Source of the DNA: Amphiscolops sp. MND2022
Lineage: Eukaryota
Assembly (NCBI GenBank): GCA_964187785.1
Contig: OZ076411.1
Coordinates: 17,856,001-17,920,000 of the forward strand
Direction: 5' to 3'
Length of the DNA stretch: 64,000 nucleotides
Position numbers and translations under genes: made by a program. Of the stretch, positions 1,291-63,886 are shown in pieces. Numbering within the stretch: position 1 is the stretch's first letter; every line of letters starts with the position of its first letter. The notes below the pieces were generated by a model. That model saw only the letters and a list, made by a program, of their open reading frames with translations. It was not told the DNA's origin and searched no databases.

Positions 1291-1622
1291 TTTGCTCGGT
1301 TTTTATCTGCTTAGGTTACCAGGATTAGATTTCTTAGGTTTATATTTCTTAGGCTTGTTTCTCAAACTCAAGTTTCTCTGGATTGTCTTTCTTACGATTA
1401 GGTTTCTTAGGATTAGGTTTTCTAACCTTAGTTGTCTTAGGTTCAGGTTTTTAGGCTTAGGTTTTTTAGGCGTAGGTGTCTTAGGCTGAAGTTTTCTTAA
1501 TTAGGTCATTGGTTTAGGTTTCATAGGCCAACTATAACATATTAAATTTTGTTTTTAATATAACAGGATCAGCAGCTCTTCATCTTCGACCCCAACTACA
1601 GCAGGAGAAAGAAATAAACATT

Positions 1623-1693
1623 TTCAAGATAATCTTCAAGAATGTGAACAGTTAATCATCTCTAGTTCAAGATTGTTCAAGAATAATTCAAGA
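1623..1693 (+). repeat. Cluster of five TTCAAGA heptamers in each unit; representative copy shown
   Basis: TTCAAGA at 1623, 1635, 1666, 1676 and 1687, and at the equivalent positions in the other units. Confidence 0.8.
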
Positions 1694-2297
1694 TTCAGCT
1701 TTCAACCTTTCTCACAAGAGTGTGTCAAAAGAAGGATTCCACAAGAGTGAGCCAGAAAGTACGAAATCAAGATTCAGCAGCCACCTTTTTTGAAACATTT
1801 TCTGGTCCACGTTTTCTCATTAGATGAAAACATTGCATGTGTTATTAATATACACAACTACTTTCTCATCAAGAAAAGCTTTAAAACGACCATTTAATGT
1901 GATTGCACCTCGAAACCTGACGAACCATAATCCTTGATAATTATAATGAGCATGTATCCATTGGAACAGACTTCAGAAGGTTTTCATTTTCAAACATCTA
2001 AAATCAAGCTTGACAAAAAAGGCCAAGTATGTGATCATTGGCGACAGCCATTTGAAGCGTGTAAATCACAGTCAAATACAAGGCAACGCAAAAGTTATTG
2101 CCCGCGGAGGGTTGCAAGCTCATCGTATAACTGAGCAATATTTATCCGAATTCAAAGAATATGATGTCTGCTTCCTCATCGTCGGTGGGAACGACGTGAG
2201 CTTTCATCCGACTTATAACCCTCTCCATAAAACAGCCAGACAAACAGCTGATCGATTAATCAGTTGTCAATTTTTATTGAAATTCGTTTCCGAGCCT

Positions 2298-2556
2298 GTT
2301 TCTTAGGTTAGGTTTCTTTTGCTTGGTTTTTATCTGCTTAGGTTACCAGGATTAAATATCTTAGGTTTATATTTCTTAGGCTTATATTTCTCAAGCTCAA
2401 GTTTCTCTGGATTATCTTTCTTACGATTAGGTTTCTTAGGATTAGGTTTTCTAACCTTAGTTGTCTCAGGCTCAGGTTTTTAGGCTTAGGTTTTTTAGGC
2501 TTAGGTTTCTTAGGCTTGAGTTTTCTTAATTAGGTCATTGGTTTAGGTTTCATAGG
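2298..2556 (+). repeat. Degenerate 15-bp minisatellite (consensus TTAGGCTTAGGTTTC, ~16 copies) at the start of every unit; representative copy shown
   Basis: The tract parses as ttaggtttatatttc / ttaggcttatgtttc / tcaagctcaagtttc / tctggattatctttc / ttacgattaggtttc / ttaggattaggtttt etc. Length variants among units are mostly in-register ~15-bp deletions (near 4555, 8520, 41375, 42385, 43525, 48640, 49645, 51670). Confidence 0.85.
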
Positions 2557-5091
2557 CCAACTATAACATATTAAATTTTGTTTTTAATATTACAGGATCA
2601 GCAGCTCTTCATCTTCGACCCCAACTACAGCAGGAGAAAGAAATAAACATTTTCAAGATAATCTTCAAGAATGTGAACAGTTAATCATCTCTAGTTCAAG
2701 ATTGTTCAAGAATAATTCAAGATTCAGCTTTCAACCTTTTTCACAAGAGTGTGTCAAAAGAAGGATTCCACAAGATAAGAGCCAGAAAGTACGAAATCAA
2801 GAGTCAGCAGCCACTTTTTTTGAAACATATTCTGATCCACGTTTTCTCATTAGATGAAAACATTGCATGTGTTATTAATATACACAACTACTTTCTCATC
2901 AAGAAAAGCTTTAAAACGACCATTTAAAGTGATTGCTCCTCGAAACCTGACGAACCATAATCCTTGATAATTATAACGAGCATGTATCCATTGGAACAGA
3001 CGTCAGAAGGTTTTCATTTTCAAACATCTAAAATCAAGCTTAACAAAAAAGGCCAAGTATGTGATCATTGGCGACAGCCATTTGAAGCGTGTAAATCACA
3101 GTCAAATACAAGGCAACGCAAAAGTTATTGCCCGCGGAGGGTTGCAAGCTCATCGTATAACTGAGCAATATTTATCCGAATTCAAAGAATATGATGTCTG
3201 CTTCCTCATCGTCGGTGGGAACGACGTGAGCTTTCATCCGACTTATAACCCTCTCCATAAAACAGCCAGACAAACAGCTGATCGATTAATCAGTTGTCAA
3301 TTTTTATTGAAATTCGTTTCCGAGCCTGTTTCTTAGGTTAGGTTTCTTTTGCTTGGTTTTTATCTGCTTAGGTTACCAGGATTAAATATCTTAGGTTTAT
3401 ATTTCTTAGGCTTATATTTCTCAAGCTCAAGTTTCTCTGGATTATCTTTCTTACGATTAGGTTTCTTAGGATTAGGTTTTCTAACCTTAGTTGTCTCAGG
3501 CTCAGGTTTTTAGGCTTAGGTTTTTTATGCTTAGGTTTCTTAGGCTTGAGTTTTCTTAATTAGGTCATTGGTTTAGGTTTCATAGGCCAACTATAACATA
3601 TTAAATTTTGTTTTTAATATTACAGGATCAGCAGCTCTTCATCTTCGACCCCAACTACAGCAGGAGAAAGAAATAAACATTTTCAAGATAATCTTCAAGA
3701 ATGTGAACAGTTAATCATCTCTAGTTCAAGATTGTTCAAGAATAATTCAAGATTCAGCTTTCAACCTTTTTCACAAGAGTGTGTCAAAAGAAGGATTCCA
3801 CAAGATAAGAGCCAGAAAGTACGAAATCAAGAGTCAGCAGCCACTTTTTTTGAAACATATTCTGATCCACGTTTTCTCATTAGATGAAAACATTGCATGT
3901 GTTATTAATATACACAACTACTTTCTCATCAAGAAAAGCTTTAAAACGACCATTTAAAGTGATTGCTCCTCGAAACCTGACGAACCATAATCCTTGATAA
4001 TTATAACGAGCATGTATCCATTGGAACAGACGTCAGAAGGTTTTCATTTTCAAACATCTAAAATCAAGCTTAACAAAAAAGGCCAAGTATGTGATCATTG
4101 GCGACAGCCATTTGAAGCGTGTAAATCACAGTCAAATACAAGGCAACGCAAAAGTTATTGCCCGCGGAGGGTTGCAAGCTCATCGTATAACTGAGCAATA
4201 TTTATCCGAATTCAAAGAATATGATGTCTGCTTCCTCATCGTCGGTGGGAACGACGTGAGCTTTCATCCGACTTATAACCCTCTCCATAAAACAGCCAGA
4301 CAAACAGCTGATCGATTAATCAGTTGTCAATTTTTATTGAAATTCGTTTTCGAGCCTGTTTCTTAGGTTAGGTTTCTTTTGCTTGGTTTTTATCTGCTTA
4401 GGTTACCAGGATTAAATTTCTTAGGTTTATATTTCTTAGGCTTATGTTTCTCGAACTCAAGTTTCTCTGGATTATCTTTCTTACGATTAGGTTTCTTAGG
4501 ATTAGGTTTTCTAACCTTAGTTGTCTCAGGCTCAGGTTTTTAGGCTTAGGTTTCTTAGGCTTAAGTTTTCTTTATTAGGTCATTGGTTCGGGTTTCATAG
4601 GCCAACTATAACATATTAAATTTTGTTTTTAATATTACAGGATCAGCAGCTCTTCATCTTCGACCCCAACTACAGCAGGAGAAAGAAATAAACATTTTCA
4701 AGATAATCTTCAAGAATGTGAACAGTTAATCATCTCTAGTTCAAGATTGTTCAAGAATAATTCAAGATTCAGCTTTCAGCCTTTCTCACAAGAGTGTGTC
4801 AAAAGAAGGATTCCACAAGAGTGAGCCAGAAAGAACGAAATCAAGATTCAACAGCCACCTTTTTTGAAACATTTTCTGATCCACGTTTTCTCATTAGATG
4901 AAAACATTGCATGTGTTATTAATATACACAACTACTTTCTCATCAAGAAAAGCTTGAAATGACCATTTAAAGTGATTGCACCTCGAAACCTGACGAACCA
5001 TAATCCTTGATAATTATAATGAGCATGTATCCATTGGAACAGACTTCAAAAGTTTTCATTTTCAAACATCTAAAATCAAGCTTAACAAAAA

Positions 5092-5379
5092 ATGGCCAAG
5101 TATGTGATCATTGGCGACAGCCATTTGAAGCGTGTAAATCACAGTCAAATACAAGGCAACGCAAAAATTATTGCCCGTGGAGGGCTGCAAGCTCATCGTA
5201 TAACTGAGCAATATTTATCCGGATTCAAAGAATATGATGTCGGCTTCCTCATCGTCGGTGGGAACGACGTGAGCTTTCATCCGACTTATAACTCTCTCCA
5301 TAAAACAGCCAGACAAACAGCCGATCGATTAATCAGTTGTCAATTTTTATTGAAATTCGTTTCCGAGCCCGTTTCTTAG
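5092..5379 (+). pseudogene. 3'-truncated SGNH/GDSL hydrolase-like ORF (95 aa); representative of the 50 internal copies
   Basis: MAKYVIIGDSH (block I GDS), ARGG (block II Gly) and FLIVGGNDV (block III GxND). The frame stops at the TAG of the first TTAGG of the next unit, so block V (D-x-x-H) is absent. Some copies have stops or frameshifts (units at 13301, 18435, 21519, 23573, 31795, 36917, 44070, 49181) or lack the ATG (units 1-3 and 5). Confidence 0.8.
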
Positions 5380-14300: not shown

Positions 14301-17300
14301 CTAAAATCAAGCTTAACAAAAAATGGCCAATTATGTGATCATTGGCGACAGCCATTTGAAGCGTGTAAATCAGAGTCAAATACAAGGCAACGCAAAAATT
14401 ATTGCCCGTGGAGGGTTGCAAGGTCATCGTATAACTGAGCAATATTTATCCGAATTCAAAGAATATGATGTCGGCTTCCTCATCGTCGGTGGGAACGACG
14501 TGAGCTTTCATCCGACTTATAACCCTCTCCATAAAACAGCCAGACAAACAGCCGATCGATTAATCAGTTGTCAATTTTTATTGAAATTCGTTTCCGAGCC
14601 CGTTTCTTAGGTTAGGTTTCTTTTGCTTGGTTTTTATCTGCTTATGTTACCGGGATTAAATTTCTTAGGTTTATATTTCTTAGGCTTATGTTTCTCAAGC
14701 TCAAGTTTCTCTGGATTATCTTTCTTACGATTAGGTTTCTTAGGATTAGGTTTTCTAACATTTGTTGTCTCAGGCTCAGGTTTTTAGGCTTAGGTTTTTT
14801 AGGCTTAGGTGTCTTAGGCTTAAGTTTTCTTAATTAGGTCATTGGTTTAGGTTTCATAGGCCAACTATAACATATTAAATTTTGTTTTTAATATTACAGG
14901 ATCGGCAGCTCTTCATCTTCAACCCCAACAACAGCAGGAGAAAGAAATGAACATTTCCATGATAATCTTCAAGAATGTGAACAGTTAATCATCTCTAGTT
15001 CAAGATTGTTCAAGAATATTTCAAGATTCAGCTTTCAACCTTTCTCACAAGAGTGTGTCAAAAGAAGGATTCCACAGGAGTGAGCCAGAAAGTACGAAAT
15101 CAAGATTCAGCAGCCACCTTTTTTGAAACATTTTCTGGTCCACGTTTTCTCATTAGATGAAAACATTGCATGTGTTATTAATATACACAACTGCTTTCTC
15201 ATCAAGAAAAACTCAAAATGACCATATAAAGTGATTGCACCTCGAAACCTGACGAACCATAATCCTTGATAATTATAATGAGCATGTATCCATTGGAACA
15301 GACTTCAAAAGTTTTCATTTTCAAACATCTAAAATCAAGCTTAACAAAAAATGGCCAATTATGTGATCATTGGCGACAGCCATTTGAAGCGTGTAAAACA
15401 CAGTCAAATACAAGGCAACGCAAAAATTATTGCCCGTGGAGGGTTGCAAGGTCATCGTATAACTGAGCAATATTTATCCGAATTCAAAGAATATGATGTC
15501 GGCTTCCTCATCGTCGGTGGGAACGACGTGAGCTTTCATCCGACTTATAACCCTCTCCATAAAACAGCCAGACAAACAGCCGATCGATTAATCAGTTGTC
15601 AATTTTTATTGAAATTCGTTTCCGAGCCCGTTTCTTAGGTTAGGTTTCTTTTGCTTGGTTTTTATCTGCTTATGTTACCGGGATTAAATTTCTTAGGTTT
15701 ATATTTCTTAGGCTTATGTTTCTCAAGCTCAAGTTTCTCTGGATTATCTTTCTTACGATTAGGTTTCTTAGGATTAGGTTTTCTAACATTTGTTGTCTCA
15801 GGCTCAGGTTTTTAGGCTTAGGTTTTTTAGGCTTAGGTGTCTTAGGCTTAAGTTTTCTTAATTAGGTCATTGGTTTAGGTTTCATAGGCCAACTATAACA
15901 TATTAAATTTTGTTTTTAATATTACAGGATCGGCAGCTCTTCATCTTCAACCCCAACAACAGCAGGAGAAAGAAATGAACATTTCCATGATAATCTTCAA
16001 GAATGTGAACAGTTAATCATCTCTAGTTCAAGATTGTTCAAGAATATTTCAAGATTCAGCTTTCAACCTTTCTCACAAGAGTGTGTCAAAAGAAGGATTC
16101 CACAGGAGTGAGCCAGAAAGTACGAAATCAAGATTCAGCAGCCACCTTTTTTGAAACATTTTCTGGTCCACGTTTTCTCATTAGATGAAAACATTGCATG
16201 TGTTATTAATATACACAACTGCTTTCTCATCAAGAAAAACTCAAAATGACCATATAAAGTGATTGCACCTCGAAACCTGACGAACCATAATCCTTGATAA
16301 TTATAATGAGCATGTATCCATTGGAACAGACTTCAAAAGTTTTCATTTTCAAACATCTAAAATCAAGCTTAACAAAAAATGGCCAATTATGTGATCATTG
16401 GCGACAGCCATTTGAAGCGTGTAAAACACAGTCAAATACAAGGCAACGCAAAAATTATTGCCCGTGGAGGGTTGCAAGGTCATCGTATAACTGAGCAATA
16501 TTTATCCGAATTCAAAGAATATGATGTCGGCTTCCTCATCGTCGGTGGGAACGACGTGAGCTTTCATCCGACTTATAACCCTCTCCATAAAACAGCCAGA
16601 CAAACAGCCGATCGATTAATCAGTTGTCAATTTTTATTGAAATTCGTTTCCGAGCCCGTTTCTTAGGTTAGGTTTCTTTTGCTTGGTTTTTATCTGCTTA
16701 GGTTACCGGGATTAAATTTCTTAGGTTTATATTTCTTAGGCTTATGTTTCTCAAGCTCAAGTTTCTCTGGATTATCTTTCTTACGATTAGGTTTCTTAGG
16801 ATTAGGTTTTCTAACCTTTGTTGTCTCAGGCTCAGGTTTTTAGGCTTAGGTTTTTTAGGCTTAGGTGTCTTAGGCTTAAGTTTTCTTAATTAGGTCATTG
16901 GTTTAGGTTTCATAGGCCAACTATAACATATTAAATTTTGTTTTTAATATTACAGGATCAGCAGCTCTTCATCTTCGACCCCAACTACAGCAGGAGAAAG
17001 AAATAAACATTTTCAAGATAATCTTCAAGAATGTGAACAGTTAATCATCTCTAGTTCAAGATTGTTCAAGAATAATTCAAGATTCAGCTTTCAACCTTTC
17101 TCACAAGAGTGTGTCAAAAGAAGGATTCCACAGGAGTGAGCCAGAAAGTACGAAATCAAGATTCAGCAGCCACCTTTTTTGAAACATTTTCTGGTCCACG
17201 TTTTCTCATTAGATGAAAACATTGCATGTGTTATTATTATACACAACTACTTTCTCATCAAGAAAAGCTCAAAATGACCATATAAAGTGATTGCACCTCG

Positions 17301-20300
17301 AAACCTGACGAACCATAATCCTTGATAATTATAATGAGCATGTATCCATTGGAACAGACTTCAAAAGTTTTCATTTTCAAACATCTAAAATCAAGCTTAA
17401 CAAAAAATGGCCAATTATGTGATCATTGGCGACAGCCATTTGAAGCGTGTAAAACACAGTCAAATACAAGGCAACGCAAAAATTATTGCCCGTGGAGGGT
17501 TGCAAGGTCATCGTATAACTGAGCAATATTTATCCGAATTCAAAGAATATGATGTCGGCTTCCTCATCGTCGGTGGGAACGACGTGAGCTTTCATCCGAC
17601 TTATAACCCTCTCCATAAAACAGCCAGACAAACAGCCGATCGATTAATCAGTTGTCAATTTTTATTGAAATTCGTTTCCGAGCCCGTTTCTTAGGTTAGG
17701 TTTCTTTTGCTTGGTTTTTATCTGCTTAGGTTACCGGGATTAAATTTCTTAGGTTTATATTTCTTAGGCTTATGTTTCTCAAGCTCAAGTTTTTCTGGAT
17801 TATCTTTCTTACGATTAGGTTTCTTAGGATTAGGTTTTCTAACCTTTGTTGTCTCAGGCTTAGGTTTTTAGGCTTAGGTTTTTTAGGCTTAGGTGTCTTA
17901 GGCTTAAGTTTTCTTATTTAGGTCATTGGTTTAGGTTTCATAGGCCAACTATAACATATTAAATTTTGTTTTTAATATTACAGGATCAGCAGCTTTTCAT
18001 CTTCGACCCCAACTACAGCAGGAGAAAGAAATGAACATTTTCAAGATAATCTTCAAGAATGTGAACAGTTAATCATCTCTAGTTCAAGATTGTTCAAGAA
18101 TAATTCAAGATTCAGCTTTCAACCTTTCTCACAAGAGTGTGTCAAAAGAAGGATTCCACAGGAGTGAGCCAGAAAGTACGAAATCAAGATTCAGCAGCCA
18201 CCTTTTTTGAAACATTTTCTGGTCCACGTTTTCTCATTAGATGAAAACATTGCATGTGTTATTAATATACACAACTACTTTCTCATCAAGAAAAACTCAA
18301 AATGACCATATAAAGTGATTGCACCTCGAAACCTGACGAACCATAATCCTTGATAATTATAATGAGCATGTATCCATTGGAACAGACTTCAAAAGTTTTC
18401 ATTTTCAAACATCTAAAATCAAGCTTAACAAAAAATGGCCAATTATGTGATCATTGGCGACAGCCATTTGAAGCGTGTAAAACACAGTCAAATACAAGGC
18501 AACGCAAAAATTATTGCCCGTGGAGGGTTGCAAGGTCATCGTATAACTGAGCAATATTTATCCGAATTCAAAGAATATGATGTCGGCTTCCTCATCGTCG
18601 GTGGGAACGACGTGAGCTTTCATCCGACTTAGAACCCTCTCCATAAAACAGCCAGACAAACAGCCGATCGATTAATCAGTTGTCAATTTTTATTGAAATT
18701 CGTTTCCGAGCCCGTTTCTTAGGTTAGGTTTCTTTTGCTTGGTTTTTATCTGCTTAGGTTACCGGGATTAAATTTCTTAGGTTTATATTTCTTAGGCTTA
18801 TGTTTCTCAAGCTCAAGTTTCTCTGGATTATCTTTCTTACGATTAGGTTTCTTAGGATTAGGTTTTCTAACCTTTGTTGTCTCAGGCTCAGGTTTTTAGG
18901 CTTAGGTTTTTTAGGCTTAGGTGTCTTAGGCTTAAGTTTTCTTATTTAGGTCATTGGTTTAGGTTTCATAGGCCAACTATAACATATTAAATTTTGATTT
19001 TAATATTACAGGATCGGCAGCTCTTCATCTTCGACCCCAACTACAGCAGGAGAAAGAAATGAACATTTTCAAGATAATCTTCAAGAATGTGAGCAGTTAA
19101 TCATCTCTAGTTCAAGATTGTTCAAGAATAATTCAAGATTCAGCTTTCAACCTTTCTCACAAGAGTGTGTCAAAAGAAGGATTCCACAGGAGTGAGCCAG
19201 AAAGTACGAAATCAAGATTCAGCAGCCACCTTTTTTGAAACATTTTCTGGTCCACGTTTTCTCATTAGATGAAAACATTGCATGTGTTATTAATACACAC
19301 AACTACTTTCTCATCAAGAAAAGCTCAAAATGACCATATAAAGTGATTGCACCTCGAAACCTGACGAACCATAATCCTTGATAATTATAATGAGCATGTA
19401 TCCATTGGAACAGACTTCAAAAGTTTTCATTTTCAAACATCTAAAATCAAGCTTAACAAAAAATGGCCAAGTATGTGATCATTGGCGACAGCCATTTGAA
19501 GCGTGTAAATCACAGTCGAATACAAGGCAACGCAAAAGTTATTGCCCGTGGAGGGTTGCAAGCTCATCGTATCACTGAGCAATATTTATCCGAATTCAAA
19601 GAATATGATGTCTGCTTCCACATCGTCGGTGGGAACGACGTGAGCTTTCATCCGACTTATAACCCTCTCCATAAAACGGCCAGACAAACAGCCGATCGAT
19701 TAATCAGTTGTCAATTTTTATTGAAATTCGTTTCCGAGCCCGTTTCTTACGTTAGGTTTCTTTTGCTTGGTTTTTATCTGCTTAGGTTACCAGGATTAAA
19801 TTTCTTAGGTTTATATTTCTTAGGCTTATGTTTCTCAAGCTCAAGTTTCTCTGGATTATCTTTCTTACGATTAGGTTTCTTAGGATTAGGTTTTCTAACC
19901 TTAGTTGTCTCAGGCTCAGGTTTTTAGGCTTAGGTTTTTTAGGCTTAGGTGTCTTAGGCTTAAGTTTTCTTAATCAGGTCATTGGTTTAGGTTTCATAGG
20001 CCAACTATAACATATTAAATTTTGTTTTTAATATTACAGGATCAGCAGCTCTTCATCTTCGACCCCAACTACAGCAGGAGAAAGAAATAAATATTTTCAA
20101 GATAATCTTCAAGAATGTGAACAGTTAATCATCTCTAGTTCAAGATTGTTCAAGAATAATTCAAGATTCAGCTTTCAACCTTTCTCACAAGAGTGTGTCA
20201 AAAGAAGGATTCCACAAGAGTGAGCCAGAAAGTAGGAAATCAAGATTCAGCAGCCACCTTTTTTGAAACATTTTCTGATCCACGTACTCTCATTAGATGA

Positions 20301-23300
20301 AAACATTGCATGTGTTATTAATATACACAACTACTTTCTCATCAAGAAAAGCTTAAAATGACCATTTAAAGTGATTGCACCTCGAAACCTGACGAACCAT
20401 AATCCTTGATAATTATAATGAGCATGTATCCATTGGAACAGACTTCAAAAGTTTTCATTTTCAAACATCTAAAATCAAGCTTAACAAAAAATGGCCAAGT
20501 ATGTGATCATTGGCGACAGCCATTTGAAGCGTGTAAATCACAGTCAAATACAAGGCAACGCAAAAATTATTGCCCGTGGAGGGTTGCAAGCTCATCGTAT
20601 AACTGAACAATATTTATCCGAATTCGGAGAATATGATGTCTGCTTCCTCATCGTCGGTGGGAACGACGTGAGCTTTCATCCGACTTATAACTCTCTCCAT
20701 AAAACGGCCAGACAAACAGCCGATCGATTAATCAGTTGTCAATTTTTATTGAAATTCGTTTCCGAGCCCGTTTCTTAGGTTAGGTTTCTTTTGCTTGGTT
20801 TTCATCTGCTTAGGTTACCGGGATTAAATTTCTTAGGTTTATATTTCTTAGGCTTATGTTTCTCAAGCTCAAGTTTCTCTGGATTATCTTTCTTACGATT
20901 AGGTTTCTTAGGATTAGGTTTTCTAACCTTAGTTGTCTCAGGCTCAGGTTTTTAGGCTTAGGTTTTTTAGGCTTAGGTGTCTTAGGCTTAAGTTTTCTTA
21001 ATCAGGTCATTGGTTTAGGTTTCATAGGCCAACTATAACATATTAAATTTTGTTTTTAATATTACAGGATCAGCAGCTCTTCATCTTCGACCCCAACTAC
21101 AGCAGGAGAAAGAAATAAATATTTTCAAGATAATCTTCAAGAATGTGAACAGTTAATCATCTCTAGTTCAAGATTCTTCAAGAATAATTCAAGATTCAGC
21201 TTTCAACCTTTCTCACAAGAGTGTGTCAAAAGAAGGATTCCACAAGAGTGAGCCAGAAAGTAGGAAATCAAGATTCAGCAGCCACCTTTTTTGAAACATT
21301 TTCTGATCCACGTACTCTCATTAGATGAAAACATTGCATGTGTTATTAATATACACAACTACTTTCTCATCAAGAAAAGCTTAAAATGACCATTTAAAGT
21401 GATTGCACCTCGAAACCTGACGAACCATAATCCTTGATAATTATAATGAGCATGTATCCATTGGAACAGACTTCAAAAGTTTTCATTTTCAAACATCTAA
21501 AATCAAGCTTAACAAAAAATGGCCAAGTATGTGATCATTGGCGACAGCCATTTGAAGCGTGTAAATCACAGTCAAATACAAGGCAACGCAAAAATTATTG
21601 CCCGTGGAGGGTTGCAAGCTCATCGTATAACTGAGCAATATTTATCCGAATTCGGAGAATATGATGTCTGCTTCCTCATCGTCGGTGGGAACGACGTGAG
21701 CTTTCATCCGACTTATAACTCTCCATAAAACGGCCAGACAAACAGCCGATCGATTAATCAGTTGTCAATTTTTATTGAAATTCGTTTCCGAGCCCGTTTT
21801 TTAGGTTAGGTTTCTTTTGCTTGGTTTTTATCTGCTTAGGTTACCGGGATTAAATTTCTTAGGTTTATATTTCTTAGGCTTATGTTTCTCAAGCTCAAGT
21901 TTCTCTGGATTATCTTTCTTACGATTAGGTTTCTTAGGATTAGGTTTTCTAAGCTTTGTTGTCTCAGGCTCAGGTTTTTAGGCTTAGGTTTTTTAGGCTT
22001 AGGTGTCTTAGGCTTGAGTTTTCTTAATTAGGTCATTGGTTTAGTTTTCATAGGCCAACTATAACATATTAAATTTTGTTTTAAATATTACAGGATCAGC
22101 AGCTCTTCATCTTCGACCCCAACTACAGCAGGAGAAAGAAATGAACATTTTCAAGATAATCTTCAAGAATGTGAACAGTTAATCATCTCTAGTTCAAGAT
22201 TGTTCAAGAATAATTCAAGATTCAGCTTTCAACCTTTCTCACAAGAGTGTGTCAAAAGAAGGATTTCACAGGAGTGAGCCAGAAAGTACGAAATCAAGAT
22301 TCAGCAGCCACCTTTTTTGAAACATTTTCTGGTCCACGTTTTCTCATTAGATGAAAACATTGCATGTGTTATTAATATACACAACTACTTTCTCATCAAG
22401 AAAAGCTTAAAATGACCATATAAAGTGATTGCACCTCGAAACCTGACGAACCATAATCCTTGATAATTATAATGAGCATGTATCCATTGGAACAGACTTC
22501 AAAAGTTTTCATTTTCAAACATCTAAAATCAAGCTTAACAAAAAATGGCCAAGTATGTGATCATTGGCGACAGCCATTTGAAGCGTGTAAATCACAGTCA
22601 AATACAAGGCAACGCAAAAATTATTGCCCGTGGAGGGTTGCAAGCTCATCGTATAACTGAGCCATATTTATCCGAATTCGAAGAATATGATGTCTGCTTC
22701 CTCATCGTCGGTGGGAACGACGTGAGCTTTCATCCGACTTATAACCCTCTCCATAAAACGGCCAGACAAACAGCCGATCGATTAATCAGTTGTCAATTTT
22801 TATTGAAGTTCGTTTCCGAGCCCGTTTCTTAGGTTAGGTTTCTTTTGCTTGGCTTTTATCTGCTTAGGTTACCGGGATTAAATTTCTTAGGTTTAAATTT
22901 CTTAGGCTTATGTTTCTCAAGCTCAAGTTTCTCTGGATTATCTTTCTTACGATTAGGTTTCTTAGGATTAGGTTTTCTAACATTTGTTGTCTCAGGCTCA
23001 GGTTTTTAGGCTTAGGTTTTTTAGGCTTAGGTGTCTTAGGCTTAAGTTTTCTTAATTAGGTCATTGGTTTAGGTTTCATAGGCCAACTATAACATATTAA
23101 ATTTTGTTTTTAATATTACAGGATCAGCAGCTCTTCATCTTCGACCCCAACAACAGCAGGAGAAAGAAAAGAACATTTTCAAGATAATCTTCAAGAATGT
23201 GAACAGTTAATCATCTCTAGTTCAAGATTGTTCAAGAATAATTCAAGATTCAGCTTTCAACCTTTCTCACAAGAGTGTGTCAAAAGAAGGATTCCACAGG

Positions 23301-26300
23301 AGTGAGCCAGAAAGTACGAAATCAAGATTCAGCAGCCACCTTTTTTGAAACATTTTCTGGTCCACGTTTTCTCATTAGATGAAAACATTGCATGTGTTAT
23401 TAATATACACAACTACTTTCTCATCAAGAAAAGCTCAAAATGACCATATAAAGTGATTGCACCTCGAAACCTGACGAACCATAATCCTTGATAATTATAA
23501 TGAGCATGTATCCATTGGAACAGACTTCAAAAGTTTTCATTTTCAAACATCTAAAATCAAGCTTAACAAAAAATGGCCAATTATGTGATCATTGGCGACA
23601 GCCATTTGAAGCGTGTAAAACACAGTCAAATACAAGGCAACGCAAAAATTATTGCCCGTGGAGGGTTGCAAGGTCATCGTATAACTGAGCAATATTTATC
23701 CGAATTCAAAGAATATGATGTCGGCTTCCTCATCGTCGGTGGGAACGACGTGAGCTTTCATCCGACTTATAACTCTCCATAAAACAGCCAGACAAACAGC
23801 CGATCGATTAATCAGTTGTCAATTTTTATTGAAATTCGTTTCCGAGCCCGTTTTTTAGGTTAGGTTTCTTTTGCTTGGTTTTTATCTGCTTAGGTTACCG
23901 GGATTAAATTTCTTAGGTTTATATTTCTTAGGCTTATGTTTCTCAAGCTCAAGTTTCTCTGGATTATCTTTCTTACGATTAGGTTTCTTAGGATTAGGTT
24001 TTCTAAGCTTTGTTGTCTCAGGCTCAGGTTTTTAGGCTTAGGTTTTTTAGGCTTAGGTGTCTTAGGCTTGAGTTTTCTTAATTAGGTCATTGGTTTAGTT
24101 TTCATAGGCCAACTATAACATATTAAATTTTGTTTTAAATATTACAGGATCAGCAGCTCTTCATCTTCGACCCCAACTACAGCAGGAGAAAGAAATGAAC
24201 ATTTTCAAGATAATCTTCAAGAATGTGAACAGTTAATCATCTCTAGTTCAAGATTGTTCAAGAATAATTAAAGATTCAGCTTTCAACCTTTCTCACAAGA
24301 GTGTGTCAAAAGAAGGATTTCACAGGAGTGAGCCAGAAAGTACGAAATCAAGATTCAGCAGCCACCTTTTTTGAAACATTTTCTGGTCCACGTTTTCTCA
24401 TTAGATGAAAACATTGCATGTGTTATTAATATACACAACTACTTTCTCATCAAGAAAAGCTTAAAATGACCATATAAAGTGATTGCACCTCGAAACCTGA
24501 CGAACCATAATCCTTGATAATTATAATGAGCATGTATCCATTGGAACAGACTTCAAAAGTTTTCATTTTCAAACATCTCAAATCAAGCTTAACAAAAAAT
24601 GGCCAAGTATGTGATCATTGGCGACAGCCATTTGAAGCGTGTAAATCACAGTCAAATACAAGGCAACGCAAAAATTATTGCCCGTGGAGGGTTGCAAGCT
24701 CATCGTAAAACTGAGCCATATTTATCCGAATTCGAAGAATATGATGTCTGCTTCCTCATCGTCGGTGGGAACGACGTGAGCTTTCATCCGACTTATAACC
24801 CTCTCCATAAAACGGCCAGACAAACAGCCGATCGATTAATCAGTTGTCAATTTTTATTGAAATTCGTTTCCGAGCCCGTTTCTTAGGTTAGGTTTCTTTT
24901 GCTTGGTTTTTATCTGCTTAGGTTACCGGGATTAAATTTCTTAGGTTTATATTTCTTAGGCTTATGTTTCTCAAGCTCAAGTTTCTCTGGATTATCTTTC
25001 TTACGATTAGGTTTCTTAGGATTAGGTTTTCTAACATTTGTTGTCTCCGGCTCAGGTTTTTAGGCTTAGGTTTTTTAGGCTTAGGTGTCTTAGGCTTAAG
25101 TTTTCTTAATTAGGTCATTGGTTTAGGTTTCATAGGCCAACTATAACATATTAAATTTTGTTTTTAATATTACAGGATCAGCAGCTCTTCATCTTCGACC
25201 CCAACAACAGCAGGAGAAAGAAAAGAACATTTTCAAGATAATCTTCAAGAATGTGAACAGTTAATCATCTCTAGTTCAAGATTGTTCAAGAATAATTCAA
25301 TATTCAGCTTTCAACCTTTCTCACAAGAGTGTGTCAAAAGAAGGATTCCACAGGAGTGAGCCAGAAAGTACGAAATCAAGATTCAGCAGCCACCTTTTTT
25401 GAAACATTTTCTGGTCCACGTTTTCTCATTAGATGAAAACATTGCATGTGTTATTAATATACACAACTACTTTCTCATCAAGAAAAGCTTAAAATGACCA
25501 TATAAAGTGATTGCACCTCGAAACCTGACGAACCATAATCCTTGATAATTATAATGAGCATGTATCCATTGGAACAGACTTCAAAAGTTTTCATTTTCAA
25601 ACATCTAAAATCAAGCTTAACAAAAAATGGCCAAGTATGTGATCATTGGCGACAGCCATTTGAAGCGTGTAAATCACAGTCAAATACAAGGCAACGCAAA
25701 AATTATTGCCCGTGGAGGGTTGCAAGCTCATCGTATAACTGAGCCATATTTATCCGAATTCGAAGAATATGATGTCTGCTTCCTCATCGTCGGTGGGAAC
25801 GACGTGAGCTTTCATCCGACTTATAACCCTCTCCATAAAACGGCCAGACAAACAGCCGATCGATTAATCAGTTGTCAATTTTTATTGAAATTCGTTTCCG
25901 AGCCCGTTTCTTAGGTTAGGTTTCTTTTGCTTGGTTTTTATCTGCTTAGGTTACCGGGATTAAATTTCTTAGGTTTATATTTCTTAGGCTTATGTTTCTC
26001 AAGCTCAAGTTTCTCTGGATTATCTTTCTTACGATTAGGTTTCTTAGGATTAGGTTTTCTAACATTTGTTGTCTCCGGCTCAGGTTTTTAGGCTTAGGTT
26101 TTTTAGGCTTAGGTGTCTTAGGCTTAAGTTTTCTTAATTAGGTCATTGGTTTAGGTTTCATAGGCCAACTATAACATATTAAATTTTGTTTTTAATATTA
26201 CAGGATCAGCAGCTCTTCATCTTCGACCCCAACAACAGCAGGAGAAAGAAAAGAACATTTTCAAGATAATCTTCAAGAATGTGAACAGTTAATCATCTCT

Positions 26301-50300: not shown

Positions 50301-53230
50301 TAACTGAGCAATATTTATCCGAATTCAAAGAATATGATGTCTGCTTCCTCATCGTCGGTGGGAACGACGTGAGCTTTCATCCGACTTATAACCCTCTCCA
50401 TAAAACGGCCAGACAAACAGCCGATCGATTAATCAGTTGTCAATTTTTATTGAAATTCGTTTCCGAGCCCGTTTCTTAGGTTAGGTTTCTTTTGCTTGGT
50501 TTTTATCTGCTTAGGTTACCGGGATTAAATTTCTTGGGTTTATATTTCTTAGGCTTATGTTTCTCAAGCTCAAGTTTCTCTGGATTATCTTTCTTACGAT
50601 TAGGTTTCTTAGGATTAGGTTTTCTAACCTTTGTTGTCTCAGGCTCAGGTTTTTAGGCGTAGGTGTCTTAGGCTTAAGTTTTCTTAATTAGATCATTGGT
50701 TTAGGTTTCATAGGCCAACTATAACATATTAAATTTTGTTTTTAATATTACAGGATCAGCAGCTCTTCATCTTCGACCCCAACTACAGCAGGAGAAAGAA
50801 ATAAACATTTTCAAGATAATCTTCAAGAATGTGAACAGTTAATCATCTCTAGTTCAAGATTGTTCAACAATAATTTAAGATTCAGCTTTCAACCTTTCTC
50901 ACAAGAGTGTGTCAAAAGAAGGATTCCACAAGAGTGAGCCAGAAAGAACGAAATCAATATTCAGCAGCCACCTTTTTTGAAACATTTTCTGATCCACGTT
51001 TTCTCCTTAGATGAAAATATTGCATGTGTTATCAATATACACAACTACTTTCTCATCAAGAAAAGCATAAAATGACCATTTAAAGTGATTGCACCTCGAA
51101 ACCTGACGAACCATAATCCTTGATAATAATAATGAGCATGTATCCATTGGAACAGACTTCAAAAGTTTTCATTTTCAAACATCTAAAATCAAGCTTAACA
51201 AAAAATGGCCAAGTATGTGATCATTGGCGACAGCCATTTGAAGCGTGTAAATCACAGTCAAATACAAGGCAACGCAAAAATTATTGCCCGTGGAGGGTTG
51301 CAAGCTCATCGTATAACTGAGCAATATTTATCCGAATTCAAAGAATATGATGTCTGCTTCCTCATCGTCGGTGGGAACGACGTGAGCTTTCATCCGACTT
51401 ATAACCCTCTCCATAAAACGGCCAGACAAACAGCCGATCGATTAATCAGTTGTCAATTTTTATTGAAATTCGTTTCCGAGCCCGTTTTTTAGGTTAGGTT
51501 TCTTTTGCTTGGTTTTTATCTGCTTAGGTTACCGGGATTAAATTTCTTGGGTTTATATTTCTTAGGCTTATGTTTCTCAAGCTCAAGTTTCTCTGGATTA
51601 TCTTTCTTACGATTAGGTTTCTTAGGATTAGGTTTTCTAACCTTTGTTGTCTCAGGCTCAGGTTTTTAGGCTTAGGTGTCTTAGGCTTAAGTTTTCTTAA
51701 TTAGGTCATTGGTTTAGGTTTCATAGGCCAACTATAACATATTAAATTTTGTTTTTAATATTACAGGATCAGCAGCTCATCTTCGACCCCAACTACAGCA
51801 GGAGAAAGAAATAAACATTTTCAAGATAATCTTCAAGAATGTGAACAGTTAATCATCTCTAGTTCAAGATTGTTCAACAATAATTTAAGATTCAGCTTTC
51901 AACCTTTCTCACAAGAGTGTGTCAAAAGAAGGATTCCACAAGAGTGAGCCAGAAAGAACGAAATCAAGAATCAGCAGCCACCTTTTTTGAAACATTTTCT
52001 GATCCACGTTTTCTCATTAGATGAAAACATTGCATGTGTTATTAATATACACAACTACTTTCTCATCAAGAAAAGCTTAAAATGACCATTTAAAGTGATT
52101 GCACCTCGAAACCTGACGAACCATAATCCTTGATAATTATAATGAGCATGTATCCATTGGAACAGACTTCAAAAGTTTTCATTTTCAAACATCTAAAATC
52201 AAGCTTAACAAAAAATGGCCAAGTATGTGATCAATGGCGACAGTCATTTGAAGCGTGTAAATCACAGTCAAATACAAGGCAACGCAAAAATTATTGCCCG
52301 TGGAGGGTGGCAAGCTCATCGTATAACTGAGCAATATTTATCCGAATTCAAAGAATATGATGTCTGCTTCCTCATCGTCGGTGGGAACGACGTGAGCTTT
52401 CATCCGACTTATAACCCTCTCCATAAAACGGCCAGACAAACAGCCGATCGATTAATCAGTTGTCAATTTTTATTGAAATTCGTTTCCGAGCCCGTTTCTT
52501 AGGTTAGGTTTCTTTTGCTTGGTTTTTATCTGCTTAGGTTACCGGGATTAAATTTCTTGGGTTTATATTTCTTAGGCTTATGTTTCTCAAGCTCAAGTTT
52601 CTCTGGATTATCTTTCTTACGATTAGGTTTCTTAGGATTAGGTTTTCTAACCTTTGTTGTCTCAGGCTCAGGTTTTTAGGCGTAGGTGTCTTAGGCTTAA
52701 GTTTTCTTAATTAGATCATTGGTTTAGGTTTCATAGGCCAACTATAACATATTAAATTTTGTTTTTAATATTACAGGATCAGCAGCTCTTCATCTTCGAC
52801 CCCAACTACAGCAGGAGAAAGAAATAAACATTTTCAAGATAATCTTCAAGAATGTGAACAGTTAATCATCTCTAGTTCAAGATTGTTCAAGAATAATTTA
52901 AGATTCAGCTTTCAACCTTTCTCACGAGAGTGTGTCAAAAGAAGGATTCCACAAGAGTGAGCCAGAAAGAACGAAATCAAGATTCAGCAGCCACCTTTTT
53001 TGAAACATTTTCTGATCCACGTTTTCTCATTAGATGAAAAAACATTGCATGTGTTATTAATATACACAACTACTTTCTCATCAAGAAAAGCTTCAAAATG
53101 ACCAATTAAAGTGATTGCACCTCAAAACCTGACGAACCATAATCCTTGATAATTATAATGAGCATGTATCCATTGGAACAGACTTCAAAAGTTTTCATTT
53201 TCAAACATCTAAAATCAAGCTTAACAAAAA

Positions 53231-53886
53231 ATGGCCAAGTATGTGATCATTGGCGACAGCCATTTGAAGCGTGTAAATCACAGTCAAATACAAGGCAACG
53301 CAAAAATTATTGCCCGTGGAGGGTTGCAAGCTCATCGTATAACTGAGCAATATTTATCCGAATTCAAAGAATATGATGTCTGCTTCCTCATCGTCGGTGG
53401 GAACGACGTGAGCTTTCATCCGACTTATAACCCTCTCCATAAAACGGCCAGACAAACAGCCGATCGATTAATCAGTTGTCAATTTTTATTGAAATTCGTT
53501 TCGGAGCCCAACGTTTTTCAAAAGACTTGCACTTACGTGAATTCCATCTACAACGAACTTTTCTATGCGATATCATTTTTCTGGTTCAAGGCAAAACCTT
53601 TTGAAATAATTGTAATTTGACAACTTTTTTCGAGGTTTACAACGATATTGTGAAAATAACATGGGCGTCACTTGCTATGTATTTGGTGTACACCCCAGAT
53701 ACGACAGTCCGAATATTCCAACTCTCAGGAATTTTCTCTAAGACTCCCTCGGGCCGAACTGTCGGACTATATAAGTCAATCAAATTTTGTCATGTGGACA
53801 GAAAGGACCGAGTGCATCTGAGACCGAACGCATATTTCCTAGTTACTCAAGTGATAAACGAAGCCATTCGAGACATTGAAAACTAA
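53231..53886 (+). pseudogene. Full-length SGNH hydrolase-like gene, split by a frameshift near 53605-53620
   Basis: The last unit reads through into unique sequence (ORF 53231-53620). The overlapping ORF 53617-53886 carries HVDRKDRVHLRPNAYFLVTQVINEAI, which matches SGNH block V (D-x-x-H followed by an amphipathic helix). Confidence 0.72.
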
Positions 53887-54240
53887 TGTAATCACTCACT
53901 AAATTATGAATGTATTTACGTGATGAATAGTACCTTCCAGTTCAAGATAGAAACATTCGGTGTTTTTCAACGTATTTTTTGAAACTGAAAATTCAAATAT
54001 GTTTCGATAATACAATTCAAGATCAAATTTACTGTACCCCCTAATAACTTTCTGGCTATCCAAGAAAAAACAACATTATAAGTAAAATTTTCACTTTAGA
54101 GGAACTAATCACGTGCTGTATAACAGTGTCAAACATTTCAGTTTCTTGTATCGATAACATTCCAAAAACTGCGGGTTTTTACACTAATTTCATGCTTTTG
54201 AACAAATAACAATTTTACATACTCATTTGAAATTTTTTGA

Positions 54241-54857
54241 ATTTGGCGTCTGATCCATTCGAACTTCCGTAAAGTGGCAGAAATTCAGTTACATAGCAAT
54301 GAAATATGTTTAACATCATTTTTAGTTTGAAAAATCATGAAATAGGGAATAATTCAAAGACTACTGAGACTGGTGTCTGGGCCATTTTAGGTAGTAACAG
54401 TACCAGTGTTTCACCTGAAAATTCCATTACATATTTTCTACAACTTTTTAAATACAAGTAAAACTGCAAAGTAAAACAATATAGTAAGTGTTGGTGAAAC
54501 TGGTGTCTGACCTTATGGTGTTAACAGTGCAAGAAAATCAGTTACATTTACAAATAAACATTATTGTTAAATCTTTTTGAGTAAAACAATGCTATATAAA
54601 GTTTGCTTAGACTGCTGAGTGACTTTTTCTGAATGCTCACAGTGGGAGAATAACACTTAAATAGACACGAAACGTTCCTCATTTCTTCTGAGAATCAGAT
54701 AATTGATCATTATAAATGTTACTGAGACTGGTGTCTGACACAACTGGGTGTTAACAGTACCAGAAAGTCCGTTACATTAGCAATTGAACAGAATGCTATC
54801 ATAAGTTTCATTATAGATAATAGGGAGAAAAATTGCTAACTGCAAAGTAAAATTTCA
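54241..54857 (+). repeat. Four degenerate dispersed direct repeats with core (A)CTGGTGTCTG...GGTGTTAACAGTACCAGAAA.TC.GTTACAT
   Basis: ttggcgtctga...cagaaattcagttacat (54243-54293); actgagactggtgtctgg...ggtagtaacagtaccag (54363-54406); gaaactggtgtctgacc...ggtgttaacagtgcaagaaaatcagttacat (54496-54547); actgagactggtgtctgac...ggtgttaacagtaccagaaagtccgttacat (54721-54777). aactgcaaagtaaaa also occurs twice (~54462 and ~54838). Confidence 0.75.
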
Positions 54858-63330: not shown

Positions 63331-63346
63331 AATCGGAAGAAAAACA

Positions 63347-63856: not shown

Positions 63857-63886
63857 CTGTTTTGAATTAACGGATACAAGCTTTCT

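What the first reader, a model, noticed from the sequence alone, without database searches (positions are those of the whole stretch)
1291..53509. 52-kb satellite built from half a gene: 51 tandem copies of a truncated SGNH-hydrolase cassette, with the parent locus still attached
Seen: each ~1028-bp unit carries the first 95 codons of an SGNH-like gene, and only the last unit continues into the gene's C-terminus and on to a Helitron-like RepHel gene. The array is therefore a local amplification of the first ~1 kb of the downstream unique region. Established: Helitron-type elements replicate by rolling circle and are known to seed tandem arrays and satellites. Inference: this is a Helitron-arm-derived complex satellite, caught next to its source, in which a coding fragment has become the satellite monomer.
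Basis: partly seen in the sequence, partly recalled or inferred. Interest (0 to 1): 0.8.

Follow-up and report, generated by a model that had tools for sequence, protein, structure and literature searches.

The report
Tandem array from dead Helitron's arm
A real 52-kb run of 51 head-to-tail copies of a 1-kb piece (a minisatellite plus the first exon of an esterase-like gene) has grown out of the front part of a dead rolling-circle transposon that still sits beside it; it is a neat but fairly ordinary case of a young, single-locus repeat array born from a mobile element.

Summary
Window 1291-53508 holds 51 tandem units (1,006-1,033 bp, mostly 1,028). All 50 internal junctions are of one type, and the last unit runs on into unique DNA.

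Each unit holds a degenerate 15-mer minisatellite, about 500 bp, the complete exon 1 of an SGNH-like gene, and the first 31-34 nt of its intron. The "95 codons" are exon 1 plus read-through into intron and the next unit.

A related single-arm copy in the same assembly (L005) has the intact two-exon gene, contiguous across the junction point, followed by an intact OTU-Rep-PIF1 ORF. So the array derives from the element, not the reverse.

The SGNH gene is under purifying selection between element lineages (dN/dS 0.14) but evolves neutrally inside the array (pN/pS 1.08; 9 of 51 copies broken). The attached parent is dead: exon 2 has a stop and a 2-bp deletion, and the Rep-helicase-GIY-YIG gene (57085-63856) has more than 10 frameshifts.

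The units lack the conserved hairpin motif that marks this family's ends. The array is therefore not a concatemer of mini-Helitrons. One non-homologous duplication followed by unequal exchange fits best.

The array occurs at one locus only. A second, 99.6%-identical copy of the locus carries a shorter, reshuffled array.

The parts
1..1290 (+). Left flank: 3'-truncated LTR-retrotransposon-like gag-protease-integrase ORF (Ty1/copia gene order), cut inside the integrase HHCC zinc finger where the array begins
   Evidence: ORF 106-1314. CX2CX4HX4C zinc knuckle with a weak Pfam zf-CCHC hit, E 0.006, below threshold. The protease-like LDSAC and the H..H..C..C motif are read directly from the translation. 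Classification is an inference from motif order.
1291..53508 (+). Tandem array: 51 head-to-tail units, about 1,028 bp each, with a single junction type GAGCC|CGTTTCTTAGG
   Evidence: Mean pairwise substitution divergence is 2.46%, adjacent units 1.5%. Neighbours u14=u15 and u48=u49 are identical, as are u47 and u50 three units apart. Block u12-17 resembles u27-32.
52494..52725 (+). Degenerate 15-mer minisatellite (GTTTCTTAGGCTTAG-like) at the start of each unit (coordinates given for the last unit)
   Evidence: TRF rows in every unit. Homologous to the minisatellite upstream of SGNH in L006 (9465-9596) and L005 (9735-9861).
53231..53477 (+). SGNH-like gene, exon 1 (blocks I GDSH, II ARGG, III GGND), copy in the last unit; the same exon recurs in every unit
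   Evidence: The exon end is set by where window, L005 and L006 stop being alignable as protein (..LISC) and by conserved GT donors (53475 or 53478).
53478..53634 (+). Intron 1 of the SGNH-like gene; the array junction (53508/53509) lies 31-34 nt inside it
   Evidence: Non-triplet indels between window and L005 in this stretch. The reading frame resumes as LQRYC after a conserved ..TTTTTTCGAG acceptor in window and L005; L006 resumes as LQRYC after a different acceptor (..GATAAAG) at the end of an unrelated intron.
53635..53886 (+). SGNH-like gene, exon 2 (strand CYVFGVxPR and block V DRVHL), inactivated here by an in-frame TAA (53739-53741) and a 2-bp deletion (about 53768)
   Evidence: Comparison with the intact exon 2 of L005:10414-10667. 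The same stop is present in the second copy, L001.
53887..57084 (+). Spacer between SGNH and RepHel. The first ~350 bp (53911-54236) is still homologous to L005; the rest is unique with no recognisable domains
57085..63856 (+). Decayed Rep-helicase-GIY-YIG gene of a Helitron-like element. Rep motif FFLTLTCNQ at about 60080, Walker A GRPGSGKT at about 62155, GIY-YIG at about 63497-63683
   Evidence: tblastn colinear with residues 2-2268 of the intact P0004, with at least 12 frame changes. About 47% aa identity to P0166/P0164. GIY-YIG Pfam hit E 3.5e-4. The intact relatives P0004 and P0166 have Helitron_like_N, PIF1 and GIY-YIG above Pfam gathering scores.

Best explanation
The array is a young, single-locus tandem amplification of an internal 5' segment of a dead Helitron-like transposon. 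Intact relatives of this element have the order: conserved hairpin motif, about 0.8 kb, palindromic 114-122-bp repeats, 15-mer minisatellite, two-exon SGNH-like (texim-like) esterase gene, then a 2,300-2,500-aa Rep-PIF1 helicase ORF (N-terminal OTU in L005; C-terminal GIY-YIG in the P0004/P0166 clade). In the window's copy, one non-homologous duplication joined a point 31-34 nt inside SGNH intron 1 to the start of the minisatellite. That created a 1,028-bp repeat. Unequal exchange between misaligned repeats then expanded it to 51 units and keeps reshuffling it. The copies are not selected as coding sequence, and the array has no shown function. Shown: the anatomy, the single junction type, derivation from the element, neutral evolution of the copies, death of the parent, restriction to one locus, and rapid turnover. 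Inferred: the founding event (illegitimate recombination or template switching, possibly favoured by the unstable minisatellite) and expansion by unequal exchange.
For: Anatomy: 51 units share one junction type.

Direction of derivation: L005, a single-arm relative, is 80.7% identical to window 53098-53892 and contiguous across the junction point. It carries an intact exon 1-intron-exon 2 gene followed by an intact 2,531-aa OTU/Helitron_like_N/PIF1 ORF. L006 has the same order.

Selection: dN/dS is 0.14 for exon 1 between window and L005. Inside the array pN/pS is 1.08, variant density in the exon (0.20 per site) is close to that in non-coding parts (0.26), and 9 of 51 ORFs are broken.

No termini in the units: the family's conserved hairpin motif is absent from the window (0 matches at up to 3 mismatches). 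It is present 2.55 kb downstream of the window's RepHel (L002 13155-13177) and in every unit of the arrays around the intact relatives. The unit has no notable inverted repeat.

Turnover: adjacent units are more alike (1.5%) than distant ones (2.5-2.8%), some units are identical, and there is a 15-unit-lag block duplication. A second copy of the locus (ctg184203) has flanks 99.6% identical. Its array is only roughly colinear with the window's, with 19 units matching window u04-u30 at 97.6-99.5%; I estimate about 31 units there against 51.

Single locus: the exon-1 peptide was found on only four contigs of the assembly.
Against: The founding mechanism is not observable. Microhomology at the junction is at most 1-2 nt, which fits several repair routes equally well.

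Other loci of the same element group also carry tandem copies of their 5' segment (L003, L004, L008; two SGNH arms in L005). This recurrence hints at an element-intrinsic process rather than chance duplication.

The left edge of the array abuts a truncated retrotransposon rather than the expected 5' arm, so the locus has been rearranged and part of its history is lost.

Read-level support for the copy number could not be checked.
Confidence: 0.65

Rival explanations
1. Rolling-circle origin. Either the element's own Rep/helicase re-initiated and terminated at a cryptic site in the SGNH intron, or a 1,028-bp excised circle was copied by rolling-circle replication and the concatemer recombined back into the parent. 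Either route gives [unit]n + parent in one burst; later unequal exchange added the local structure.
For: Helitron-type elements can leave tandem and partial tandem copies (Pritham & Feschotte 2007, as cited in bioRxiv 10.1101/2021.06.02.446622). In this genome, intact RepHel-GIY-YIG elements lie within tandem arrays of ~1.3-kb units that repeat their own 5' ~1.1 kb (L003, L004, L008). L005 carries a second, degenerate SGNH arm whose end also falls inside the intron. A single junction type in all 50 junctions fits a burst.
Against: The window's units lack the conserved hairpin motif present in every unit of the other arrays. The junction does not resemble that motif or its CTAG. The element is dead, so it could only have acted early or in trans. 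Unit similarity depends on distance and is block-structured rather than star-like.
Confidence: 0.2
2. Pre-existing satellite. The 1,028-bp repeat was there first, and the Helitron-like element inserted next to it or captured part of it.
For: Arrays of ~1.3-kb units flank other elements of the group on both sides, which could also be read as insertion into a satellite.
Against: The unit contains exon 1 of a gene whose exon 2 lies in the unique part. The whole gene is contiguous, intact and under purifying selection in L005. The unit does not resume within 10 kb to the right of the RepHel gene. The unit is found nowhere else.
Confidence: 0.03
3. Assembly artefact. A short array was expanded by the assembler.
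For: The array (52 kb) is longer than typical accurate long reads, and some neighbouring units are identical.
Against: Units differ by 2.5% on average, with many private variants and length variants that anchor them. A second contig carries an independently assembled array of at least 20 kb with a different unit order. The contig names carry depth tags of 101x and 103x, in line with other contigs (89-109x).
Confidence: 0.04
4. Functional array. It is maintained because it is used, for example as a source of small RNAs against the element family, as a chromatin or centromere-type repeat, or as a multi-copy expressed truncated peptide.
For: None direct. Forty-two of 51 units keep an open 95-codon frame.
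Against: pN/pS is 1.08 and variant density in the exon equals that of non-coding parts. Start codons and frames are lost in many units. Copy number differs greatly between two near-identical copies of the locus. The open frames are explained by the array's youth (2.5% divergence).
Confidence: 0.05

Closest known systems
texim-Helitron association in teleost fish (Tomaszkiewicz et al. 2014, PMC4021074)
   Same: A small SGNH-hydrolase gene lies a few kb upstream of a Helitron coding region and travels with it. The paper also notes the relationship of such SGNH domains to CR1/L2 retrotransposon esterases. Here the best, though weak, fold match of exon 1 is the zebrafish L2 ORF1 esterase 4c1b.
   Different: Orthology to texim was not tested. 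Here the helicase protein carries a C-terminal GIY-YIG domain. The host is an unidentified eukaryote from an ENA assembly. The gene's first exon has been amplified 51-fold.
Satellite-like tandem repeats carried by Helentron / DINE-type non-autonomous elements (C. gigas, PMC7492417; reviews PMC12628747, PMC9659126)
   Same: Tandem repeats that originate inside Helitron-like elements and can expand into arrays.
   Different: Those repeats are short (about 100-200 bp) central repeats. They are spread to many loci by transposition of the carrier. Here the monomer is 1 kb, includes a coding exon, sits at one locus, and was not spread.
Head-to-tail tandem Helitron copies attributed to rolling-circle read-through (Pritham & Feschotte 2007; D. 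pseudoobscura Y, bioRxiv 10.1101/2021.06.02.446622)
   Same: Tandem, often partial, copies of Helitron sequence next to a full element. The ~1.3-kb arrays around L003, L004 and L008 in this genome may be of this kind.
   Different: In the window's array the unit has no element terminus. The junction is intron-to-minisatellite, not 3' end to 5' end.
Helentron / HLE2 elements (Rep-Hel plus AP endonuclease; HELIANO survey, PMC11417382)
   Same: A large Rep-PIF1 helicase protein with an added endonuclease domain and an OTU domain in some members. That survey reported a GIY-YIG domain in one moss HLE2 family.
   Different: The endonuclease here is GIY-YIG, not AP endonuclease. The DUF6570 marker of HLE2 was not detected. 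Placement in HLE1 or HLE2 was not tested.

Membership tests
Helitron-like element (HLE) | Rep (HUH) nuclease domain | tested here: met
   Pfam Helitron_like_N is above the gathering score in the intact relatives P0004 (31.8 bits) and P0166 (31.4 bits). The window copy is colinear with them over this region, 73% identical at P0004 residues 973-1083. The motif FFLTLTCNQ is read in the window at about 60080.
Helitron-like element (HLE) | PIF1-type helicase fused downstream of Rep | tested here: met
   Pfam PIF1 is above gathering in P0004, P0166 and the L005 ORF. The window has GRPGSGKT and VLFIDDIGQL...GDPKQL in order.
Helitron-like element (HLE) | Defined termini (5' TC or TT; 3' hairpin plus CTRR) and insertion without target duplication at AT or TT | tested here: inconclusive
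   A conserved 9-bp-stem hairpin (GGGCATGCC-GA-GGCATGCCC), followed about 55 nt later by GCTAG, occurs 2.3-2.6 kb after the RepHel stop in L002, L003, L004 and L008, and once per flanking unit. Exact ends and target sites could not be fixed.
Helentron (HLE2 subgroup with AP endonuclease) | Apurinic/apyrimidinic (Exo_endo_phos) endonuclease domain | tested here: not met
   No such Pfam hit in P0004, P0166, P0022, P0067, P0017 or the L005 ORF. A GIY-YIG domain sits at the C-terminus of the first five; the L005 ORF gave no GIY-YIG hit.
SGNH/GDSL hydrolase | Blocks I (GDS), II (G), III (GxND) and V (DxxH), in order and with usual spacing | tested here: met
   GDSH at residues 8-11, ARGG at 28-31 and GGND at 56-59 in exon 1. 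DRVHL is near the C-terminus in exon 2 of L005 and the window.
SGNH/GDSL hydrolase | Significant match to a family profile or fold | tested here: inconclusive
   No Pfam or PDB sequence hit for the single exons. Atlas feature neighbours of exon 1 and of exon 2, taken separately, are mostly GDSL/SGNH clusters. The AF2 model of exon 1 (pLDDT 69.6) has as its top PDB match the L2 ORF1 esterase 4c1b (E 0.24), followed by TesA, Alr1529 and PatB1, all above E 0.1. The spliced protein could not be submitted.
Satellite DNA | Long head-to-tail array of one monomer | tested here: met
   51 units over 52.2 kb.
Satellite DNA | High genomic abundance, with arrays at several loci or in heterochromatin | tested here: not met
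   The exon-1 peptide occurs on only four contigs: the two copies of this locus, plus L005 and L006, which have single or double arms. Chromosomal position is unknown.
Head-to-tail Helitron concatemer | Each unit bounded by the element's 5' and 3' ends | tested here: not met
   The hairpin motif is absent from the window. The junction is intron-to-minisatellite.

The most novel reading that the evidence does not exclude
The Rep-PIF1-GIY-YIG elements of this genome may belong to a widespread, scarcely described Helitron-like lineage. At least 68 protein clusters were found in marine and other metagenomes, plus a Styela clava protein. Under this reading, replication of these elements intrinsically lays down in-situ tandem copies of the 5' segment. 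Arrays or duplicated arms are seen at the window locus, L003, L004, L008 and L005. The window's 51-unit array would then be a product of Rep-driven re-initiation with cryptic termination in the SGNH intron. That would be a transposase that manufactures satellites at its own donor site.
Probability: 0.15. Interest if true: 0.75.

Novelty: new member of a known kind. Interest (0 to 1): 0.42.

Why it matters
Satellite repeats are usually met long after their origin is erased. This locus keeps four things together:
- the monomer's source (the parent element, attached);
- an unamplified relative (L005) that shows the ancestral state;
- the single founding junction;
- a second copy of the locus with a different unit count.

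It is therefore a usable natural example for measuring how fast a new array grows and reshuffles, and for asking whether rolling-circle enzymes contribute. It also shows that an SGNH esterase gene is a selected passenger of a Rep-helicase-GIY-YIG transposon group, echoing the texim-Helitron link in fish and the esterase of L2/CR1 retrotransposons. None of this changes current views: arrays derived from transposable elements, and satellites associated with Helitrons, are established.

Tried and rejected
- **Single-exon sequence searches:** Pfam on the SGNH pieces and PDB sequence searches gave nothing.
- **Small-RNA gene array idea:** I considered that the ~1.3-kb flanking units might be a small-RNA gene array targeted by the element. 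Rfam and tRNA scans of L003-L006 and L008 were empty.
- **Unit as 5' plus 3' end:** I considered that the window's unit might be the 5' and 3' ends of the element joined together, as in a non-autonomous copy. The unit does not match anything in the 10 kb to the right of RepHel.
- **Palindromic repeat:** I looked for the 114-bp palindromic repeat of L005/L006 in the window; it is absent.
- **Retrotransposon remainder:** I looked for the rest of the left-flank retrotransposon to the right of the element. No such ORFs occur within 10 kb.
- **Second array's left end:** exact-protein look-ups of the retrotransposon ORF and of the first unit's ORF, meant to locate the left end of the second array, found no record.
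- **ORFs in flanking units:** minus-strand 'genes' called in the flanking units of L008 contain stop codons and were dropped.
- **Spacer and downstream flank:** the spacer 53887-57084 and the downstream flank gave no domain hits.
- **Host organism:** it was not identified.
Full report
**1. The observation**

The window has no N runs, and its autocorrelation peaks sharply at an offset of 1,028 bp (0.646 against a background of about 0.28). BLAST of the last unit against the window returns 51 consecutive plus-strand matches from 1291 to 53509, at 94.7-98.6% identity. The units nearest the right end are the most similar.

I cut the array at the recurring motif that ends in GAGCC. This gives 51 units: the first is 1,006 bp and truncated, and the rest are 1,008-1,033 bp with 1,028 the commonest length. 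All 50 internal junctions are of one type, GAGCC|CGTTTCTTAGG, with only scattered point variants. The 51st reads GAGCC|CAACGTTTTTC and runs into unique DNA.

**2. What a unit contains**

Each unit has the following parts:
- It starts with about 230 bp of a degenerate 15-mer minisatellite (GTTTCTTAGGCTTAG-like).
- About 500 bp follow.
- It ends with an ATG-initiated frame carrying GDSH, ARGG and GGND.

Forty-two units keep the 95-codon frame. Nine are broken by frameshift, stop or deletion, and four of the open ones have lost the ATG.

**3. The surroundings**

Left of the array (1-1290) lies a gag-protease-integrase ORF of an LTR-retrotransposon type. It is cut inside the integrase zinc finger.

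To the right, exon 2 of the SGNH-like gene ends at 53886. Then comes a 3.2-kb spacer, and then 57085-63856. That stretch is colinear with residues 2-2268 of an intact 2,268-aa protein from the same assembly (P0004), but with at least 12 frame changes.

P0004 and the closest intact relative P0166 (about 47% aa identity to the window's remnants) score above Pfam gathering thresholds for Helitron_like_N, PIF1 and GIY-YIG. The window's own C-terminal ORF (63305-63853) has a GIY-YIG hit.

In the representative library this ORF finds 344 proteins. Many are 2,200-3,000 aa long with the match at their C-terminus. A wider search with P0004 found 68 clusters. Most carry PIF1 plus GIY-YIG and come from ENA, JGI and Logan metagenomes; one is a Styela clava protein.

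**4. Where the window comes from, and a second copy**

Exact-protein look-ups place the window on contig ctg183929_103x of ENA assembly ERZ25074608. Locus L002 equals window 53347-64000 plus 9.8 kb further right. A second contig, ctg184203_101x (L001), is 99.6% identical over 20 kb of the unique part.

That contig also carries the array. L007 is 20.3 kb of units, and its right end lies about 8.5 kb from L001 on the same contig. Its 19 complete units match window units u04, u05, u06, u09, u11, u10, u16/31, u18, u21, u24, u30 and u29 at 97.6-99.5%. The order is roughly colinear but not one-to-one, with fewer units over the same stretch. From the coordinates I estimate about 31 units there against 51 here.

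The array is therefore real in two independent contigs and turns over far faster than its flanks. Whether the two contigs are haplotypes or a recent segmental duplicate cannot be told.

**5. The SGNH gene belongs to the element, and the array derives from it**

A search with the 129-aa ORF of the last unit found only seven proteins, all from this assembly and on four contigs: the two arrays, ctg185925 and ctg185838.

On ctg185925 (L005), a 95-aa ORF 75% identical to the window's sits 1.5 kb upstream of an intact 2,531-aa ORF with OTU, Helitron_like_N and PIF1 hits. On ctg185838 (L006), a 52%-identical copy precedes a decayed RepHel.

Window 53098-53892 aligns to L005 9870-10673 at 80.7%, without a break at the array junction.

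The three copies agree as protein up to ..LISC and then diverge. After a conserved acceptor in window and L005 (..TTTTTTCGAG), and a different one in L006, all three resume as LQRYC. Between those points, window and L005 differ by indels that are not multiples of three, and L006 has an unrelated sequence. This is an intron, at window 53478 (or 53475) to 53634.

In L005, exon 2 is open and reads through CYVFGVLPR to DRVHL and a stop.

The unit thus carries the whole of exon 1 plus 31-34 nt of the intron. The '95 codons' are 83 real codons plus read-through.

The window's exon 2 has CAA changed to TAA (53739-53741) and a 2-bp deletion, and L001 shares the stop. Together with the frameshifted RepHel, this shows the attached parent is dead.

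**6. Is it an SGNH hydrolase?**

The four catalytic blocks are present in canonical order. Single exons gave no Pfam or PDB sequence hit.

Language-model feature neighbours of exon 1 and of exon 2, searched separately, are dominated by GDSL/SGNH clusters.

An AlphaFold model of exon 1 (pLDDT 69.6) finds as its best PDB match the esterase domain of the zebrafish L2 retrotransposon ORF1 protein (4c1b; E 0.24, probability 0.66). E. coli TesA, Alr1529 and PatB1 follow. All are SGNH folds, and all are statistically weak.

I treat the assignment as likely but not proven. The spliced protein could not be submitted to the tools.

**7. Selection**

Between the window and L005, exon 1 has dS 0.77, dN 0.107 and dN/dS 0.14. 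The gene was therefore kept functional while the element lineages diverged.

Inside the array, 10 synonymous and 41 non-synonymous variants give pN/pS 1.08. Variant density in the exon (0.20 per site) is close to that elsewhere in the unit (0.26). The copies evolve as non-functional DNA.

**8. How the array was made**

Intact relatives give a reference for what an element end looks like. L003, L004 and L008 hold intact 2,268-2,332-aa ORFs, and on both sides lie tandem ~1.3-kb units that repeat the first ~1.1 kb of the 'long unit'.

Every such unit contains a conserved motif: a perfect 9-bp-stem hairpin (GGGCATGCC-GA-GGCATGCCC), then TTCGACGACGTATGCC, and about 35 nt later GCTAGGTG. The same motif lies 2.3-2.6 kb after the RepHel stop in those loci. 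It also occurs, with a 10-nt deletion in the hairpin, 2.55 kb after the window's RepHel stop (L002 13155-13177, about 66.5 kb in window coordinates) and upstream of the SGNH module in L005. It looks like a Helitron terminal signal, though I could not fix the exact ends.

The motif is absent from the window. So is the 114-122-bp palindromic repeat that precedes the minisatellite in L005 and L006. The unit has no notable inverted repeat.

The window's array is therefore not a head-to-tail series of short elements. It is an amplification of an internal segment, running from the start of the minisatellite to the intron.

The evidence fits one founding non-homologous duplication followed by unequal exchange:
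- All junctions are of a single type.
- Microhomology at the junction is at most 1-2 nt.
- Adjacent units are more alike (1.5%) than distant ones (2.5-2.8%).
- Neighbours u14=u15 and u48=u49 are identical, as are u47 and u50 three units apart.
- There is a block duplication at a 15-unit lag, u12-17 against u27-32.
- The second copy of the locus has a different unit count.

A rolling-circle contribution, by the element's Rep or through an excised circle, is not excluded. It gains some plausibility because tandem 5' segments recur at other loci of this element group, and because L005 has a second, degenerate SGNH arm whose end also falls in the intron. Nothing in the unit points to it directly.

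**9. Other points on the family**

The SGNH module is 80% identical in nucleotides between the window and L005. Their RepHel proteins are only about 30% identical, whereas the window's RepHel is about 47% identical to a clade (P0004, P0166) whose loci lack SGNH. The module has therefore moved between element lineages or been lost repeatedly.

**10. Comparison with what is known**

- An SGNH gene (texim) a few kb upstream of a Helitron coding region is described in teleost fish, with the same suggestion of a role in transposition (PMC4021074).
- Tandem repeats carried by Helentron-type elements, and their growth into satellite-like arrays, are described in oysters and Drosophila (PMC7492417 and reviews).
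- Tandem and partial tandem Helitron copies are attributed to rolling-circle replication.
- A GIY-YIG domain in a Helitron-like element was reported for one moss family (PMC11417382).

The present case is a further example of an array derived from a transposable element. It has three unusual details: the monomer includes a complete coding exon, the source is still attached, and an unamplified relative is available for comparison.

**11. Verdict**

The rolling-circle mechanism and the word 'satellite' are not supported by the evidence available. Interest is moderate. Not done: read-level validation, identification of the host, exact element termini, and placement of the GIY-YIG clade among Helitron-like elements.

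Noticed in passing
L003:1-8194 and 19427-24650; L004:1-5068 and 16372-17441; L008:1-8164 and 19305-26274: Intact 2,268-2,332-aa Rep-PIF1-GIY-YIG ORFs lie within tandem arrays of ~1.3-kb units on both sides, at 75-97% identity. The units repeat the first ~1.1 kb of the 12-kb 'long unit'. Whether these are head-to-tail short elements, or a satellite that the elements target, is open.
   Followed up: partly
L002:13100-13200 (about 66.45-66.55 kb in window coordinates); L008:887-909 and 7 more; L003:876-898 and 3 more; L004:433-455 and 2 more; L005:3091-3113: A conserved hairpin motif (GGGCATGCC-GA-GGCATGCCC, then TTCGACGACGTATGCC, then GCTAGGTG about 35 nt later) occurs once per flanking unit and 2.3-2.6 kb after each RepHel stop. 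It is a likely terminal signal of this element group. The copy beside the window's element has a 10-nt deletion in the hairpin.
   Followed up: partly
L005:8882-9645; L006:9116-9436: A 114-122-bp tandem repeat containing a palindrome (CCAGAC..GTCTGG) lies just upstream of the 15-mer minisatellite. It is 84-94% identical between two elements whose SGNH exons are only about 52% identical as protein. This suggests a conserved cis element. It is absent from the window.
   Followed up: partly
window:53098-54236 against L005:9870-11133: The SGNH module is about 80% identical in nucleotides between elements whose RepHel proteins are only about 30% identical. The window's closest RepHel relatives (L003, L004, L008) have no SGNH gene. 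This points to module exchange or repeated loss.
   Followed up: partly
L005:8373-8791: A second, degenerate partial SGNH arm (promoter region, exon 1 and about 117 nt of intron) lies upstream of the palindromic repeats. It looks like a two-copy version of the same kind of duplication, with a different breakpoint in the same intron.
   Followed up: partly
window:1-1290: Gag-protease-integrase ORF of an LTR-retrotransposon type (Ty1/copia order), truncated in the integrase zinc finger exactly at the array edge. Its remainder is not within 10 kb to the right of the element. The expected 5' arm of the Helitron-like element is missing, so the left edge has been rearranged.
   Followed up: partly
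window:11523-12550 (unit 11): This unit has lost the GDS region through a deletion. The deletion fuses a minisatellite-encoded frame to the SGNH frame; the assembly's gene call P0162 is this chimera.
   Followed up: no
P0067 (NCBI MHA7927462.1): A 2,466-aa PIF1 + GIY-YIG protein of this eukaryotic-looking transposon family is deposited as a Marinobacter MAG protein. This is probably a mis-binned eukaryotic or viral contig.
   Followed up: no
L008:584-1294 and 4676-5218 (minus strand): Genes called on record in the flanking units contain several in-frame stop codons under the standard code. They are probably spurious calls or were made with another code.
   Followed up: partly
L006:1-2392, 2271-3234 and 19197-19828: Further unrelated tandem repeats (periods 344, 369 and 187 bp) surround the decayed SGNH-RepHel element in L006.
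   Followed up: no
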